From the IMG/VR virus record IMGVR_UViG_3300032240_001991, positions 262,659-326,658 of that record: a stretch of 64,000 nucleotides of DNA; one strand, written 5' to 3'. The position numbers and the translations under genes are program-made. Under the pieces are notes generated by a model. It ran no database searches and had not been told where the DNA came from. It was given only the letters and a program-made list of their open reading frames with translations. Positions within the stretch are counted from its first letter, which is position 1. Every line of letters starts with the position of its first letter. Shown piece by piece: positions 31,213-35,897 of the stretch.

Positions 31213-32073
31213 ATGCGTATTACCCAATTGCTTAATGAAGAAGAATTAGATGAAATAGGAATGAAAAGTATTGGCTCAGCTGCTGCTAAATTAGGCAGAG
31301 GTGCAGCCCTTGGAGTTGGAGCAGTAGCAGGTGGACTAAGAGGCATGGCTACCGCAGCTAAACAAGGGTATGATGTTGGCAAAGCTGCAACTGGACAAGG
31401 ACGATTACCAGCAGCAGGAACAACATGGGGATTTGGGAATCAATACGTAGGACCAGCAGGCGCACAGGCACCAAGCGGAGGTGGAGCTGCACAGCCAGCA
31501 GGTGGCCAAGCACCTAATTTACAAGATCAAATTAAAGATAAACAAAAGCAGAGAGACGCAATTGATCAAGAAATTCAACAGTTAAGATCTCAAATGTCTG
31601 CTGCTCCGCAAGGACCTTCGGGCACTACAGGTACCACTGGACCATCAAGTACTACAAATGCGCCAACCGGACCATCAAGTACTCCTAATGCACCAAATAC
31701 ACCGCCAGCACCTAATGCGCCAAATACACCGCCAGCACCTAATGCACCAAATGCTCCAAAACCACCAAAGACTCCAAAACCTAAAGCACCGCCAGCACCT
31801 AATGCGCCAAATACACCGCCAGCACCTAATGCACCAAATGCTCCAAAACCACCAAAGACTCCAAAACCTAAAGCACCGCCAGCACCTAATGCGCCAAATA
31901 CACCACCGGCACCAAAACCACCAAAGACTCCAAAGACTCCGCAGCCTAATCTCAATGTACAGCCTGGCGGAAAGAATGCGCCACTGGCACCAAATGCGCC
32001 AAAGACTCCGGGAACCTCTACAGCTGAGAGCTTTGATCGTTTATTAGATTTGGTTAAGAAATTACAACGTTAA
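31213..32073 (+). CDS. Low-complexity Pro/Ala-rich protein, possible internal head protein
   Basis: N-terminus MRITQLLNEEELDE resembles a capsid-targeting/cleavage leader; contains PPAPNAPN/PKPPKTP repeats and follows a late promoter. Confidence 0.65.
   Translation: MRITQLLNEEELDEIGMKSIGSAAAKLGRGAALGVGAVAGGLRGMATAAKQGYDVGKAATGQGRLPAAGTTWGFGNQYVGPAGAQAPSGGGAAQPAGGQAPNLQDQIKDKQKQRDAIDQEIQQLRSQMSAAPQGPSGTTGTTGPSSTTNAPTGPSSTPNAPNTPPAPNAPNTPPAPNAPNAPKPPKTPKPKAPPAPNAPNTPPAPNAPNAPKPPKTPKPKAPPAPNAPNTPPAPKPPKTPKTPQPNLNVQPGGKNAPLAPNAPKTPGTSTAESFDRLLDLVKKLQR
31702..31910 (+). repeat. 87-bp tandem repeat (2 full copies plus a partial third), with nested 27-bp subrepeats
   Basis: Units start at 31702, 31789 and 31876 and encode PPAPNAPNTPPAPNAPNAPKPPKTPKPKA. 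Confidence 0.9.
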
Positions 32074-32306
32074 AAGTATGGTAATCCGGACTTATTAGTT
32101 GTTTCAAGATTTTCTTCAATGATCTTGGAGATTATTTCTCTGCTTTCGTAATCAAGCTGAAAGGCTTCATCAAAAGTCAAAGATCCTCGCATATGCCAGC
32201 ACATTCTAAACAGTGCTTTCTTTAAATCTTTGCTTTCGTTTTCTAGGCCCTTAACGAGGTCTTCAATTTCAGGTATGGTTAGAGTTAAGAGCCTTGCCCG
32301 AAAAAA
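32070..32306 (-). CDS. Unannotated gp51-like ORF, probably expressed by -1 frameshift from the gp26-like gene
   Basis: Hand translation: FFRARLLTLTIPEIEDLVKGLENESKDLKKALFRMCWHMRGSLTFDEAFQLDYESREIISKIIEENLETTNKSGLPYF*. There is no ATG/GTG/TTG until MCWH, and the frame opens just before the T TTT TTC site. Confidence 0.75.
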   Translation of the reverse strand, partial: FFRARLLTLTIPEIEDLVKGLENESKDLKKALFRMCWHMRGSLTFDEAFQLDYESREIISKIIEENLETTNKSGLPYF

Positions 32307-33172
32307 TCTGAATTATCAAAGCTAATTGGCAACTCATAAGTTTCAGGAGCACCTAACGCAATAAGGTCAGGGGTAGATTTTATCAATAACGGTTTTAGAT
32401 CGTTAGTCTTCTTAAGTTCTGTGATACGTTCTTGTACTTTCTGAAATACATCTTTATCAGCATTTTGAACAAACTCTTTAATAAACTCAGAATCTTCTAC
32501 TACTGTTTCAGGTGTCTGTACAGCATAAATGCTGTCTGCAACTAGTTCTACAGTGATATCAGTCATTTTATTAAAGCTTTGATTAAAGATTTCTAGTTTA
32601 CGTTCGTCACTTAATGCTTCATCGTTAACAGCCTGCATTAATCTTTGTGTTTCAAAAGTTTTTAAACTGGTTAAAGATAGATGTCTGTAAGTTAGTGGCC
32701 TAATAAAACAAGACAGCTGATCATTAATTACAACTTTTTCGTCCCAACGTGTATTATTTGATAGCTGATCTAAAATTAGTCTTAAGTCAACAATATGTGT
32801 TACTTGTTCTGTTGTATTAGGAACAGTATGTGTAACATCCATTTTTTCGCCGTAAGTAGCAATTCTAATAGCAGCTAAGATAGAGTCAAGATCAATGTTA
32901 GGTGTTTTCCATGCATCTTTAATTGCAGGAATGCAGCTCTGAATTACGTCAACAACTGCTTGACCATTGAGTAAAGCGTCTGGGGTTTTAAATGCTAATT
33001 CGTCTTTAGCAGTCATAGAGTAAACAGCCAATTCACCGTTGGCTGGCCATTCAATACTACCTTTTTCCCAATAGGCTCCATTACTTGGCAAGCGAACATA
33101 AATCTTAGCCTGCCTCATAAAACTAGTTAACGGGTTTGGTTTCTTAAATGTTGACTGCTGAAAATTACTCAC
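32285..33172 (-). CDS. gp26: Baseplate hub/tail assembly chaperone, T4 gp26-like
   Basis: NPLTSFMRQAKIYVRLPSNG...VYSMTAKDELAFKTPDALLNGQAVVDVIQSC...IDLDSILAAIRIATYGE. Likely start GTG 33172, 6 nt after a GGAG SD. Confidence 0.75.
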   Translation of the reverse strand: MSNFQQSTFKKPNPLTSFMRQAKIYVRLPSNGAYWEKGSIEWPANGELAVYSMTAKDELAFKTPDALLNGQAVVDVIQSCIPAIKDAWKTPNIDLDSILAAIRIATYGEKMDVTHTVPNTTEQVTHIVDLRLILDQLSNNTRWDEKVVINDQLSCFIRPLTYRHLSLTSLKTFETQRLMQAVNDEALSDERKLEIFNQSFNKMTDITVELVADSIYAVQTPETVVEDSEFIKEFVQNADKDVFQKVQERITELKKTNDLKPLLIKSTPDLIALGAPETYELPISFDNSDFFGQGS

Positions 33173-33254: not shown

Positions 33255-35897
33255 ATGAACGGCGCATCTGAGGCATTATTAGAAGAAATTTTAAGAGCTA
33301 ATCAAGCCCAGGCGGCAGCCCTTAACAGACTAGCCAGTGGAGGTGGCGGAAGTGGAGGTGGCGGAGGAGCCGCAGCAGCTAACAAAGGCCTTCAAAGTTT
33401 AGGCGAAAGCTCCTTATCAGCAGTAGCGTCTTTGAATCCTCTACGTGCAGGACTAAGTGCAGTAGCACTTGGAGTAAATGCAGCCAGTAAAGCTATAGGT
33501 GTTATGGCCGGAGCTACGGTTGGCGTTACATCAATATTAATTGAGTTTGGTAAAGCAGCAGCTAACGGTAAAGCCAGCATTTCTCAAGTTACAGGTGTAT
33601 TAAGTGGATTACCGGGTCCATTTGGAATGATTGCAAGGGCAGCAACATTTGCTGCTCAGGTATTAGATACTAATGTTGCTACTCAACAAAAACTAGCAGC
33701 ATCAGGAGCAAGTTTTGGCGGCAGTCTAACCCAGATGAGAGACGCTGCTGCAAGAAGTTATCTAAGCTTAGATGAATTTGCAGGAGTGGTTGCTAAAAAT
33801 GGCGATGTATTCCGCACTATGGGCGGTGATGTTCAAAGCGGTGTAAATCAATTTACTGCAATACAAGGCAAGTTAATGAGAGGTGAATATGCTAATAATC
33901 TAGCAACACTAGGTTATAGTATGAAAGACGCCGCAGATTTGACTGCTAGCTACATGCGTGCCCAGGGTAGCATGAATAAACAAGGGTTACAAGATACTAA
34001 TAAAGTTGCAGCAGGTGTTGCCCAGTATGCTCAAGAACTAAGCATGTTAAGTAGATTAACAGGTGAAAGTAGAGAAGCTCTGCAAAAGAAACTAGACGAA
34101 GAAAATCAAGAAGCACAATGGCAAGCTATGCTAGCTACTATGAGTCCTGAAAAAGCAGAGAAAATGAGACAAGGCATGCAGTTAGCCATGGCACAGGGAG
34201 GTAAAGGTGCAGTAGATGCCTTTAAGTCTATGGCTATGGGTTTGCCTCCAATGACTGAAGGTGCTAGATTGTATACTGCTACGCAGCAAGCTGGTGTAAA
34301 AACACTAGAAAAATATAATCAAAATGCAAATAATGCATCTCTTAGTACAGCACAAGCTGCGGCATTAAACAGAAAAGCATTAGCTGAACAGATAGCAACT
34401 GGTGCAAAAGATCAACAGAAGCTGCAAACAGTGTTAAGAGCTAGTGCGATGTCAGGCGGAGAATTAGCAAAGGTATTTGCTGACACCACTAAACTACAGA
34501 CTTCATTTATGAAAGACGGTAAAATGATGTCAGAGAAGGAAATTGAAGCTCAACTAGCTAAAATGGAAGCTGATTCAAAAAAATCAGACAGCGAAGCGTC
34601 CAATGCACAAGATATGCAAAAAGCTACAATGGATTTAACTAATACCATTCTTGCTAAAATGATGCCGGCATTTAACTTCCTTTTAAACATTACTATGAAG
34701 ACAGCAATGTTCCTTGGTACGTTATTTGATCCTATTATGAGTTTTGGAACTGACTTACTTAATAAAGTAATCATGCCTGCCTTTACAGAAATATTTGGAG
34801 CAATAGATCCCTCTGAAATAATGAAACCGTTTAAAGATTTTTTCAAAGGTCTAGTAGGCGGAGGAGGAATTGACTTCAAGGCCATTAAAGATACGCTAGT
34901 TACTATTCTTAAACCTATTGTTGCGTTCGGAAAAGAGTTGATGTCGGCGATTAACTTTGAAGCAATTGGAAATTCGTTTCGAACTGTGTTTAGTAGTATC
35001 GGTAGATTGTTTACTTCTCTTTCAAATGTATTTTCAAAAGTATTTGGTAGCACAGGAGGAGGAGAAGGATTTGCTACTAAGTTAGGTAATGCGGTTACAA
35101 CATTTTTTACAACACTAGGTGACATTGTTGGTGGAATAATTGACATTGTTACTTGGATTGTTGATAGTCCAGTTGGTACCTTTTTAATGACGACATTAAA
35201 AGCTGTGTTTGGATTTTTTATAGAAAGAATAGAGCAACTAGTTTCGTTTATTAGTGGTGTAGTTGATATAGTAAAAGGTATTGTTAAGTTTGTTAGCGGA
35301 GACTTTACAGGTGCATGGGAGAATATTAAAGGCGGATTAGGAAAAATAGTTACTTCTATTAAGAACTTTTTTGTCTCACTTGGTAAATTAATTTCAACAG
35401 TTTTTTCTGGTGGTTGGGAATTAATTAAAGGAGCCTTTATGGGTATACTAACATCCTTTATTGACGGCGTTAAGTCTATTGGAAAAGGAATTTGGAATTG
35501 GGTTACTGGTAAAAAAGAAGAAACGAAACCACCTGCTCCAACACCTGCTCCTGCTCCAACACCTGCCAAAGCTGCTCCTGCTAGAGCGGTTACTGCTCAA
35601 CCAACTCCACCTGCTACCACACCCCCTGCTACGCCAGCGGATCAAAAAGCTAAGGAAGATAGACAGGCTCAGGCACAGCAGCAAGCTGCTACTACAGCAG
35701 CAAAAGAGCAAGCAAAAGAACAAAAACAAGCCCAGGAGTCAAAACCAAAGACTCCGGATGAAATTATGCAAACTGAGTTAGGTACGTTAAATAAGAATAT
35801 GGCTGCGTTACTTACATACGCTAGAGATACTCTAGGAGCTACAAGAGATAACGTTAGTGCAATTAAAGCATTGAATAGAAATCTTTACCCGAGTTAA
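33255..35897 (+). CDS. Tape-measure-like protein (gp29-like position)
   Basis: 880 aa, Ala/Gly-rich and helical, with aromatic-spaced amphipathic repeats (FKDFFKGL, FSKVFG, WENIKGG); adjacent to the gp26/gp51-like chaperone. Confidence 0.7.
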   Translation: MNGASEALLEEILRANQAQAAALNRLASGGGGSGGGGGAAAANKGLQSLGESSLSAVASLNPLRAGLSAVALGVNAASKAIGVMAGATVGVTSILIEFGKAAANGKASISQVTGVLSGLPGPFGMIARAATFAAQVLDTNVATQQKLAASGASFGGSLTQMRDAAARSYLSLDEFAGVVAKNGDVFRTMGGDVQSGVNQFTAIQGKLMRGEYANNLATLGYSMKDAADLTASYMRAQGSMNKQGLQDTNKVAAGVAQYAQELSMLSRLTGESREALQKKLDEENQEAQWQAMLATMSPEKAEKMRQGMQLAMAQGGKGAVDAFKSMAMGLPPMTEGARLYTATQQAGVKTLEKYNQNANNASLSTAQAAALNRKALAEQIATGAKDQQKLQTVLRASAMSGGELAKVFADTTKLQTSFMKDGKMMSEKEIEAQLAKMEADSKKSDSEASNAQDMQKATMDLTNTILAKMMPAFNFLLNITMKTAMFLGTLFDPIMSFGTDLLNKVIMPAFTEIFGAIDPSEIMKPFKDFFKGLVGGGGIDFKAIKDTLVTILKPIVAFGKELMSAINFEAIGNSFRTVFSSIGRLFTSLSNVFSKVFGSTGGGEGFATKLGNAVTTFFTTLGDIVGGIIDIVTWIVDSPVGTFLMTTLKAVFGFFIERIEQLVSFISGVVDIVKGIVKFVSGDFTGAWENIKGGLGKIVTSIKNFFVSLGKLISTVFSGGWELIKGAFMGILTSFIDGVKSIGKGIWNWVTGKKEETKPPAPTPAPAPTPAKAAPARAVTAQPTPPATTPPATPADQKAKEDRQAQAQQQAATTAAKEQAKEQKQAQESKPKTPDEIMQTELGTLNKNMAALLTYARDTLGATRDNVSAIKALNRNLYPS

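What the first reader, a model, noticed from the sequence alone, without database searches (positions are those of the whole stretch)
32070..32330. Programmed -1 ribosomal frameshift fusing the gp26-like chaperone to a hidden gp51-like ORF
Seen (minus strand): the gp26-like gene ends GAT TTT TTC GGG CAA GGC TCT TAA, containing the X XXY YYZ heptamer T TTT TTC (32306-32300) five codons before the stop. The -1 frame is closed by TAG, TGA and TAA just upstream, opens two codons before the heptamer, and runs to TAA at 32070 (FFRARLLTLTIPEIEDL...MCWHMRG...SGLPYF). It has no standard start codon for over 30 codons. Established: lambda G/GT, P2 and Mu tail-assembly chaperones are made by this kind of frameshift next to the tape-measure gene, whereas T4 encodes gp26 and gp51 separately. 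Inference: this jumbo phage makes a G/GT-type pair, which suggests gp26/gp51 are evolutionary counterparts of G/T.
Basis: partly seen in the sequence, partly recalled or inferred. Interest (0 to 1): 0.8.

Follow-up and report, generated by a model that had tools for sequence, protein, structure and literature searches.

The report
Conserved -1 frameshift in jumbo-phage gp26 gene
A tail-baseplate assembly gene (T4 gp26 family) of this jumbo phage and all 165 relatives examined carries a slippery U UUU UUC site, in most with a covarying RNA stem behind it, that very probably makes ribosomes slip back one base and add a 76-residue helical tail, giving a short and a long protein from one gene; the added part is not gp51-like.

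Summary
The minus-strand gp26-like gene (PF12322) ends GAT TTT TTC GGG CAA GGC TCT TAA. The -1 frame opens two codons before T TTT TTC (32306-32300) and runs to TAA at 32070, with no ATG/GTG/TTG before 32204.

Comparative data strongly support a programmed -1 ribosomal frameshift:
- All 165 related loci, from metagenomes and cultured Rak2-like jumbo phages (RaK2, 121Q, GAP32, PA5oct, XacN1, Atu_ph07), keep the heptamer in the same frame.
- The preceding codon varies over 8 codons but always ends in T.
- The second ORF is always in the -1 frame, and its peptide (FFRxRLL...WYMRG...) is conserved from the heptamer on.
- 32 of 87 sequence clusters have no start codon near the junction.
- An 11-bp stem starts 5 nt after the heptamer and covaries.
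- In a sister lineage the extension is fused in frame to a gp26-like gene. That gene follows a second, short gp26-like paralog whose slippery codons have decayed.

Not supported: the extension is not gp51-like, and no homology to lambda G/T was found. The G/GT analogy is functional inference only. I found no published report. Verdict: a new member of a known kind, real and conserved. No protein evidence exists.

The parts
32285..33172 (-). gp26-like gene, 0 frame. It gives the short product of 295 aa from GTG 33172 (299 aa if TTG 33184 is used). Stop TAA at 32287-32285.
   Evidence: ORF list; PF12322 T4_baseplate E 1.7e-10 and phrog_150 'baseplate hub' E 1e-12; GGAG 6 nt before GTG 33172 read; AlphaFold model pLDDT 91.6.
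32300..32306 (-). Slippery heptamer U UUU UUC (X XXY YYZ), codons GA[U UUU UUC].
   Evidence: Conserved in 164/165 related loci, with U UUU UUU in XacN1. The third base of the preceding codon is T in 87/87 clusters across 8 different codons, against a background P(T) of 0.57. U_UU.U_UU.C is an efficient -1 motif in E. coli (PMC4066793).
32295..32299 (-). 5-nt spacer (GGGCA) between the heptamer and the stem.
   Evidence: Spacers of 5-6 nt are the commonest among relatives.
32284..32294 (-). 5' arm of the predicted stimulatory stem (AGGCUCUUAAC). It contains the 0-frame stop codon.
   Evidence: It pairs with 32255-32245 over 11 bp. 0 of 200 codon shuffles reach that score. The helix is also in the MFE fold. 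Covariation is shown.
32245..32255 (-). 3' arm of the stem (GUUAAGGGCCU), after a 28-nt loop.
   Evidence: Relatives with the same register show compensatory pairs (L160 AGGAUUUUAAC/GUUAAAAUCCU; L114 AGGAUCUUAAC/GUUAAGAUCCU).
32070..32306 (-). -1 frame ORF. After the slip, 76 new residues (RARLLTLTIPEIEDL...WHMRG...SGLPYF) are added, giving a predicted long product of 367 aa. Stop TAA at 32072-32070.
   Evidence: Homologs at the same place and in the same frame in 158/158 loci. The profile finds 498 representatives. The model is a 3-4 helix domain with pLDDT 87.8. There is no canonical start before ATG 32204.
33255..35897 (+). Divergent neighbour: tape-measure-like protein (880 aa).
   Evidence: phrog_58, phrog_4200 and phrog_1535 'tail length tape measure protein'. 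The homologous neighbour in RaK2 is annotated as similar to a tape measure protein. The equivalents in CBB and PA5oct are detected in virions.

Best explanation
The gp26-like gene is decoded in two ways. Most ribosomes read GAU UUU UUC GGG CAA GGC UCU UAA and release a 295-aa protein. A fraction pause on U UUU UUC with tRNA-Phe in the P and A sites, held by an 11-bp stem-loop that begins 5 nt downstream. Both tRNAs slip back one base (UUU UUC to UUU UUU), and reading continues in the -1 frame for 76 more codons. This gives a 367-aa protein in which a small helical domain is attached to the C-terminus of gp26. The ratio of the two forms would be fixed by the slip frequency, which is unknown.

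Shown here: the sequence signals, their conservation, the covarying stem, and the in-frame fusion in relatives. Inferred: that the slip happens and how often it happens.

Function is inference, with about 0.35 confidence. T4 gp26 is listed as a hub assembly chaperone, and this gene abuts the tape-measure gene. The pair may therefore act like lambda G/GT: a common core acts on the hub or tape-measure complex, and a minority long form carries an extra domain that recruits another partner.
For: 1. The heptamer sits in the same register in 165/165 loci.
2. Selection acts on synonymous sites. The preceding codon is AAT 45, GAT 17, ACT 10, AGT 8, CAT 3, GCT 2, CGT 1 and TAT 1, so it always ends in T. 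The naive product of background probabilities is about 1e-23, but lineages are not independent. Phe-Phe is TTT TTC in 86 of 87 clusters here (TTT TTT in one, XacN1), against 20% elsewhere in the same loci.
3. The second ORF is in the -1 frame in 158/158 loci. That frame is open for 3 or fewer codons upstream of the heptamer in 66/87 clusters and for none in 12/87. Its peptide is conserved from residue 1 (FFR.RLL).
4. There is no ATG, GTG or TTG near the junction in 32/87 clusters, including the window. Codon 4 of the -1 frame is ATA 23, ATG 22, GCG 9, GCA 8 and so on, so it is not a conserved start.
5. A helix starts 5-6 nt after the heptamer and beats at least 190 of 200 codon shuffles in 53/87 clusters. 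Compensatory changes occur: 32 double-sided cells, reached by 0 of 500 shuffles, with 89% of cells paired against 28-61% when the partner is slid. The window's own register gives 80% paired and 6 double-sided cells.
6. About 22 representative proteins of 319-351 aa carry the same domain fused in frame to a gp26-like protein. In the three contig groups that include the whole upstream gene, that gene is a full-length short gp26-like paralog; in two further groups only an upstream fragment with a similar C-terminal tail is present. The slippery codons of these upstream genes are mostly lost (GAC TTC TTT, AAC TTC TTG, AAC TTT TTA).
7. T4 gp26 also ends ..EFFELL, but with GAG TTC TTT and no extension.
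8. U_UU.U_UU.C is shift-prone in E. coli (PMC4066793).
Against: - No protein or ribosome-profiling evidence exists for the trans-frame product. No RNA run holding the locus was found.
- The whole 107-nt region does not fold more stably than shuffles (z -0.45).
- One marine subclade (L123-L158) shows no comparable helix. The enterobacterial members have only 7-9 bp helices that do not beat shuffles.
- 22/87 clusters have an ATG overlapping the 0-frame TGA (ATGA), so coupled re-initiation is possible there.
- The groups used for covariation counts were chosen by helix register, which inflates the percentage paired.
- For the functional reading: neither part resembles known tail assembly chaperones, and the gene order differs from G/GT.
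Confidence: 0.85

Rival explanations
1. There are two separate proteins. The small ORF is translated on its own by termination-reinitiation or translational coupling at the end of the gp26-like gene, and no fusion is made.
For: In Atu_ph07, Phosso and 22/87 clusters an ATG in the -1 frame overlaps the 0-frame TGA (ATGA). Several GenBank records annotate a separate small ORF.
Against: The window and 32/87 clusters have no ATG, GTG or TTG there. Codon 4 is as often ATA, GCN or CTA as ATG. No SD-like motif can precede it, because the upstream bases are the T-run. Arg3, upstream of that ATG, is nearly invariant. This model does not explain the heptamer, its synonymous conservation or the stem. Natural in-frame fusions exist.
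Confidence: 0.08
2. Transcriptional slippage: RNA polymerase adds a U in the T6 run, so a fraction of mRNAs encode the fusion in frame.
For: A homopolymer run is present. The result, a long and a short form, would be the same.
Against: The run is exactly 6 T followed by C in 164/165 loci. From my own knowledge, known bacterial slippage sites use runs of about 8 or more, and selection for slippage should lengthen the run. The covarying stem at a 5-6 nt spacing is the hallmark of a ribosomal stimulator.
Confidence: 0.05
3. It is an artefact or decay: a sequencing indel in the T-run of a single fused gene, or a pseudogene.
For: Homopolymer runs are error-prone. In-frame fused versions exist in other phages.
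Against: The same T6 and the same frame relation occur in 165 independently assembled loci, including finished genomes of cultured phages. An independent Logan assembly is identical over the site. The in-frame fusions have a different junction (single Phe, TTC AGA) and sit beside a second paralog.
Confidence: 0.02

Closest known systems
Lambda G/GT (also P2 E/E+E' and Mu gp41/42) tail assembly chaperone frameshift
   Same: A -1 slip on an X XXY YYZ heptamer near the 3' end of a tail-morphogenesis gene beside the tape-measure gene. It yields a major short form and a C-terminally extended form that share the N-terminal core.
   Different: No sequence or fold similarity was found to known chaperones. 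The gene is divergent from the tape-measure gene instead of lying between the tube and tape-measure genes. The heptamer is U UUU UUC rather than G GGA AAG. The short form is large (295 aa) and the extension small (76 aa). Partner binding is untested.
T4 gp26 / gp26' (baseplate hub assembly protein, PF12322)
   Same: The 0-frame protein is a family member. It shares the C-terminal ..FF motif, and most relatives share the CxxC...CxxC pattern. It is divergent from the hub/tape-measure gene cluster. T4 gene 26 also gives two nested products (the 26' CDS is annotated).
   Different: T4 makes its second product from an internal in-frame start, not by frameshifting. T4 has GAG TTC TTT, no -1 extension, and gene 25 follows. 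No homolog of the extension is present in T4. The window's protein has lost all four Cys.
IS3/IS1-family and dnaX -1 frameshift signals
   Same: The same architecture: heptamer, short spacer and downstream stem-loop. U_UU.U_UU.C is one of the heptamers used by IS elements (PMC4066793).
   Different: The gene context and product differ. No upstream SD-like stimulator was seen here. No Rfam family matches.
Two-gene relatives found here (contigs L170, L171, L176): a short gp26-like paralog plus a long gp26-like protein with the extension in frame
   Same: The same two domains and the same short/long pair of products.
   Different: The pair is encoded by two adjacent genes without recoding. On the tree both paralog clades nest within the frameshifting clade, so this state looks derived (the root rests on the long T4 branch).

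Membership tests
Programmed -1 ribosomal frameshift site | An X XXY YYZ heptamer in the 0 frame that allows both tRNAs to re-pair | tested here: met
   GA[U UUU UUC] at 32306-32300; present in 165/165 relatives; the motif is shift-prone in E. coli.
Programmed -1 ribosomal frameshift site | A conserved coding ORF in the -1 frame that overlaps the site and lacks its own initiation signal | tested here: met
   158/158 loci are in the -1 frame. The profile gives E-values to 1e-31. There is no start in the window or in 32/87 clusters.
Programmed -1 ribosomal frameshift site | A downstream RNA structure 5-9 nt after the heptamer, supported by covariation | tested here: met
   An 11-bp stem after a 5-nt spacer, reached by 0/200 shuffles; compensatory changes. 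It is not seen in one subclade, and the whole-region z-score is unremarkable.
Programmed -1 ribosomal frameshift site | The trans-frame protein is observed | not testable with these tools
   No RNA or proteome data for this locus. Natural in-frame fusions in relatives are indirect support.
Lambda G/GT-type tail assembly chaperone | Sequence or fold homology to G/T-family chaperones | tested here: not met
   No TAC family in Pfam or PHROGs. No PDB sequence or fold match. One weak Atlas row with Caudo_TAP (TM 0.50 over 52 residues) is not meaningful.
Lambda G/GT-type tail assembly chaperone | The gene lies directly upstream of, and is co-oriented with, the tape-measure gene | tested here: not met
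   It is adjacent but divergent (32285-33172 on the minus strand, 33255-35897 on the plus strand). The arrangement is the same in PA5oct, 121Q, GAP32, RaK2 and CBB.
Lambda G/GT-type tail assembly chaperone | Short and long forms bind the tape measure and tube proteins and are absent from virions | not testable with these tools
   There are only hints. The CBB virion MS table lists the tape-measure-like CBB_251 but not 250. The PA5oct record flags only the neighbour as found by MS. RefSeq nevertheless calls CBB gp250 a 'structural protein'.
T4 gp26 family (PF12322 T4_baseplate) | A Pfam match above the gathering score | tested here: met
   41.4 bits against a cut-off of 24.5, E 1.7e-10; confirmed in the genome search.
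T4 gp26 family (PF12322 T4_baseplate) | Two CxxC-type Cys pairs (putative zinc ribbon), as in T4 gp26 and most relatives | tested here: not met
   The window has VPNT.. and TPDL..APET where Atu_ph07 and Phosso have CPKC and CP.E.C and T4 has C.C..CPEC. This is a loss within the family and does not exclude membership.
T4 gp51 (hub assembly catalyst) | Detectable homology of the -1 ORF to gp51 | tested here: not met
   hhalign probability 5%; nothing in the T4 genome at E<=10.

The most novel reading that the evidence does not exclude
T4-type (gp26-bearing) contractile-tail phages have their own, independently evolved counterpart of the lambda G/GT system. gp26 would be the tail or hub assembly chaperone that handles the tape-measure/hub complex. 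In the large Rak2-like jumbo-phage clade its action would need a fixed minority of a long isoform made by -1 frameshifting, and one lineage later replaced this with a duplicated gene pair. That would extend the tail-chaperone frameshift rule to the one major myovirus group thought to lack it, and would give gp26 a defined role.
Probability: 0.3. Interest if true: 0.8.

Novelty: new member of a known kind. Interest (0 to 1): 0.62.

Why it matters
1. Annotation. The extension is missing (PA5oct, RaK2) or annotated as a truncated orphan ORF (121Q, GAP32, CBB, XacN1, Vibrio phage, Phosso, Atu_ph07) in published jumbo-phage genomes. Hundreds of metagenomic gene calls are wrong in the same way.

2. 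Biology. T4 gp26 has been an ill-defined hub 'chaperone or component' for decades (PMC3004832). A conserved short/long pair, made by recoding in one lineage and by two genes in another, says that both forms are needed. It also gives a direct experimental handle in cultivable E. coli, Klebsiella and Pseudomonas phages.

3. Recoding. It adds a large, deeply conserved family to the bacterial -1 frameshift catalogue. The 3' arm of its stem-loop has moved between clades while the 5' arm stayed, which is a useful natural series for studying stimulators.

4. Evolution. If gp26 does act on the tape measure, this is a convergent solution to the problem that G/GT solves.

Tried and rejected
- Family searches: Pfam and PHROGs gave no family for the -1 ORF.
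- gp51 homology was rejected. Homology of the extension to the C-terminal part of T4 gp26 was also rejected (hhalign probability 0.6%). BLASTP of T4 gp26 against the window protein is insignificant, although both match PF12322.
- Structure searches: PDB sequence profiles, Foldseek PDB, VIA-align wide (only generic helical-hairpin matches with Z<=8), BFVD and the ESM Atlas gave no informative relatives. The fold of neither part is placed.
- Rfam has no family here.
- Nucleotide search of the phage collection found nothing, so protein-level searches were needed.
- The single-sequence MFE is not significant.
- Promoter and terminator scans showed nothing above the shuffled expectation.
- Read laying returned only assembled contigs, so read-level heterogeneity of the T-run could not be judged. 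No RNA run holds the locus.
- Literature searches found no report of this frameshift. The library lacks most subscription journals, so prior description cannot be excluded.
Full report
OBSERVATION

On the minus strand an ORF runs from 33184 to 32285. Its likely start is GTG 33172, six bases after GGAG. It ends AAT TCA GAT TTT TTC GGG CAA GGC TCT TAA. The heptamer T TTT TTC occupies 32306-32300 in X XXY YYZ register. Translation of the -1 frame gives AN*L**FRFFRARLLTLTIPEIEDL...MCWHMRG...SGLPYF*. That frame is therefore shut by TAG, TGA and TAA just upstream, opens two codons before the heptamer, and closes at TAA 32072-32070. Its first ATG, GTG or TTG is ATG 32204, deep inside what turns out to be a conserved domain.

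IDENTITY OF THE GENES

- The 0-frame protein matches PF12322 (T4_baseplate, the gp26 family) at E 1.7e-10, above the curated cut-off. It also matches phrog_150 'baseplate hub'.
- The divergent neighbour at 33255-35897 matches three tape-measure PHROGs. The next gene is a T4-type portal.
- The window is the last 64 kb of a 326,658-bp IMG/VR virus record. That record holds only one PF12322 gene and one copy of the -1 domain.
- The -1 ORF matches no Pfam or PHROG family.

RELATIVES

tblastn of the 78-residue -1 peptide hit only Agrobacterium phage Atu_ph07 and Sinorhizobium phage Phosso, directly after their gp26-like genes. Both have CA T TTT TTC in the same frame, one codon before the stop.

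Scans of IMG/VR with alignments of either part returned 357 and 162 relatives, of which 160 loci were kept. tblastn of the gp26-like protein against GenBank phages found 94 records. These were Rak2-like and related jumbo phages: RaK2, K64-1, 121Q, PBECO4, GAP32, CBB, PA5oct, XacN1 and a Vibrio phage.

In all six that I opened, the heptamer and a 72-81-residue -1 ORF beginning FF(R/Q/Y) are present. XacN1 has T TTT TTT. The ORF is unannotated in PA5oct and RaK2. Elsewhere it is annotated only from an internal ATG.

STATISTICS

- 164 of 165 loci have T TTT TTC in frame within the last 20 codons, and one has T TTT TTT.
- The second ORF is in the -1 frame in 158 of 158 loci that carry both parts.
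- After clustering at 80% identity there are 87 clusters. The codon before the Phe pair is AAT 45, GAT 17, ACT 10, AGT 8, CAT 3, GCT 2, CGT 1 and TAT 1. That is eight codons for eight amino acids, always ending in T.
- In long ORFs of the same loci the same amino acids end in T only 57% of the time. Phe-Phe is TTT TTC in only 20% of cases. The naive product of probabilities (about 1e-23) overstates significance, because lineages are related. Even so, the many amino-acid replacements with T retained show selection on the nucleotide.
- The 0-frame stop follows 1-10 codons later, and the 0-frame tail is not conserved.
- The -1 frame is open for three or fewer codons upstream of the heptamer in 66/87 clusters and for none in 12/87. 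This pins entry into the frame to the heptamer.
- 32/87 clusters, including the window, have no ATG, GTG or TTG from the upstream -1 stop to 12 codons past the heptamer.
- Where an ATG exists it is codon 4 (22/87). That position is equally often ATA (23), or GCN, CTA or GTA. The frequent TTG is the Leu of the conserved RLL motif and has no SD-like sequence before it.
- The -1 peptide is conserved from its first residues: F1 and F2 are invariant, and R3, L7, M39 and R56 are nearly so.

RNA STRUCTURE

In the window, AGGCUCUUAAC (32294-32284, which includes the 0-frame UAA) begins 5 nt after the heptamer. It pairs over 11 bp with GUUAAGGGCCU (32255-32245), leaving a 28-nt loop. The helix appears in the MFE fold, and no codon shuffle out of 200 equals it.

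Across 87 clusters the best helix anchored 2-8 nt after the heptamer averages a score of 22.6 against 13.9 in shuffles. In 53 clusters at most 10 of 200 shuffles reach the observed score.

The 5' arm is nearly fixed, because it also encodes R-L-L. The 3' arm lies in different places in different clades: ending at +61 in the window's group, about +80-83 in the largest group, and +43-45 in a third. Within each register the pairs covary:

| Group | Sequences | Cells paired | With partner slid | Double-sided changes | Shuffles reaching this |
|---|---|---|---|---|---|
| Largest group | 37 | 89% | 28-61% | 32 cells over 5 pairs | 0/500 |
| Window's group | 9 | 80% | 23-53% | 6 cells | 1/500 |

Examples from the window's register are AGGAUUUUAAC/GUUAAAAUCCU and AGGAUCUUAAC/GUUAAGAUCCU.

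There are four caveats:
- The groups were chosen by register, which favours pairing.
- The fold energy of the whole region is ordinary (z -0.45).
- A marine subclade (L123-L158) shows no such helix.
- The enterobacterial phages show only weak helices.

ROSETTA-STONE EVIDENCE

An exhaustive profile search with the -1 domain found 498 representatives. Most are short orphan ORF calls. About 22 are proteins of 319-351 aa with the domain at the C-terminus. Their sequences are gp26-like proteins (CxxC...CxxC) running straight into ..F-R-x-(R/K)-(I/L)-(L/I)...W(Y/F)MRG.. with a single Phe.

Contigs from five independent groups show this long gene. In the three groups whose contigs include the whole upstream gene (L170, L171, L176), it is immediately preceded by a second, short PF12322 gene of 294-300 aa that resembles the window's 0-frame protein. 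In L178 and L179 only an upstream fragment with a similar C-terminal tail is present.

The long genes have no slippery site (AGT TTC AGA, ACA TTC AGA, ATG TTC CGG). The upstream genes end ..NFF or ..NFL with these codons:
- GAC TTC TTT
- AAC TTC TTG
- AAC TTT TTA
- GAT TTT TTA
- AAT TTT TTC in one case, where the -1 frame closes at once

So where no extension lies in the -1 frame, the heptamer is not maintained. T4 behaves the same way: gp26 ends ..KEFFELL* with GAG TTC TTT, and gene 25 follows. These are natural negative controls.

A maximum-likelihood tree places both the short (100/100) and the long (94/96) paralog clades inside the frameshifting environmental clade (97/99), with the cultured Rak2-like phages outside it. 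This suggests that frameshifting is ancestral and the two-gene state derived. The root depends on the very long T4 branch, so this order of events is tentative.

MECHANISM

The data fit a canonical tandem -1 slip of tRNA-Phe on U UUU UUC, stimulated by a downstream stem-loop. In E. coli, H_HH.U_UU.Y heptamers are among the most efficient, and U_UU.U_UU.C is used by IS elements (PMC4066793).

The predicted products are 295 aa (short) and 291+76 = 367 aa (long). The efficiency is unknown.

The rivals are weaker:
- Independent initiation fails for the window and a third of the clusters. It also explains neither the heptamer nor the stem.
- Transcriptional slippage would favour longer runs and needs no stem.
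- Assembly error is excluded by 165 concordant loci and an identical Logan contig.

WHAT THE PARTS ARE

AlphaFold models are confident: gp26-like pLDDT 91.6 and pTM 0.85, extension pLDDT 87.8 with three to four helices. Neither finds a meaningful relative in PDB, BFVD or the ESM Atlas.

The extension is not gp51-like. In T4, gp51 is encoded on the other strand, ahead of gp27. No G/T-type chaperone similarity was found for either part.

T4 gp26 is listed as a hub assembly chaperone, with conflicting evidence that it is also a hub component (PMC3004832). In CBB the virion MS table lists the tape-measure-like neighbour but not the gp26-like protein. In PA5oct only the neighbour carries the MS flag.

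The G/GT-like reading rests on analogy, gene neighbourhood and the short/long pair. In that reading a chaperone core is joined by a minority long form with an extra binding domain. I give it about 0.3-0.35.

NOVELTY AND VERDICT

Ten full-text searches found no description of this site. Public annotations miss it. The mechanism is a known kind. The gene family, the clade-wide conservation, the migrating 3' arm and the replacement by a gene pair are new.

The frameshift is very probably real (0.85). 'gp51-like' and 'evolutionary counterpart of G/T' are not supported.

Noticed in passing
window 31213-32073 (+), repeats about 31650-31950: The convergent neighbour is a 286-aa ORF. Its C-terminal half is made of tandem Pro/Ala/Asn/Lys-rich repeats (PNAPNTPPAPNAPNAPKPPKTPKPKAP...). 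Its stop overlaps the end of the -1 ORF by 4 nt. The only family match is insignificant (phrog_5105, E 0.074).
   Followed up: no
window 32285-33172 (-), residues about 118-122 and 266-275: The window's gp26-like protein has lost all four Cys of the two CxxC-type pairs that T4 gp26, Atu_ph07, Phosso and most relatives keep. The short paralogs of the two-gene clade are likewise Cys-less, while the long in-frame paralogs keep them.
   Followed up: partly
L123-L158 (marine IMG/VR contigs), junction region: A subclade keeps the heptamer and the -1 ORF, but no helix after the heptamer beats shuffles. It has a conserved ..CUGACAAUGGGG.. stretch instead. It may use a different stimulator or none.
   Followed up: no
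G000 (own record), whole: The window belongs to a 326,658-bp linear IMG/VR virus record that CheckV rates only 36% complete. Either the phage is far larger than its Rak2-like relatives (about 285-490 kb) or the estimate is off.
   Followed up: no
L169 1803-1805 (T4 gene 26/25 junction): In T4 the ATG of gene 25 overlaps the stop of gene 26 (TAATG). Gene 25 therefore lies in the -1 frame relative to gene 26, as the extension does here. It has its own start, is unrelated in sequence, and has no slippery site.
   Followed up: partly
L163 2349-2573 (PA5oct), L166 2361-2726 (RaK2): The GenBank and RefSeq records leave the -1 ORF region unannotated. Other records (121Q, GAP32, CBB, XacN1, Vibrio 2.275.O, Atu_ph07, Phosso) annotate only a truncated small ORF from an internal or overlapping ATG.
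   Followed up: yes
L170 1296-1333: Between the short and long gp26-like paralogs lies GGTATATAAATG, which resembles the T4 late-promoter core TATAAATA (from my own knowledge). The long paralog may therefore have its own late promoter.
   Followed up: no
window 35600-35897 (+), C-terminal part of the tape-measure-like protein: A Pro/Ala/Thr-rich low-complexity stretch (PPAPTPAPAPTPAKAAPARAVTAQPTPPATTPPATP) is followed by a Gln/Ala/Lys-rich segment. This is unusual for a tape measure and recalls the repeats in the ORF at 31213-32073.
   Followed up: no
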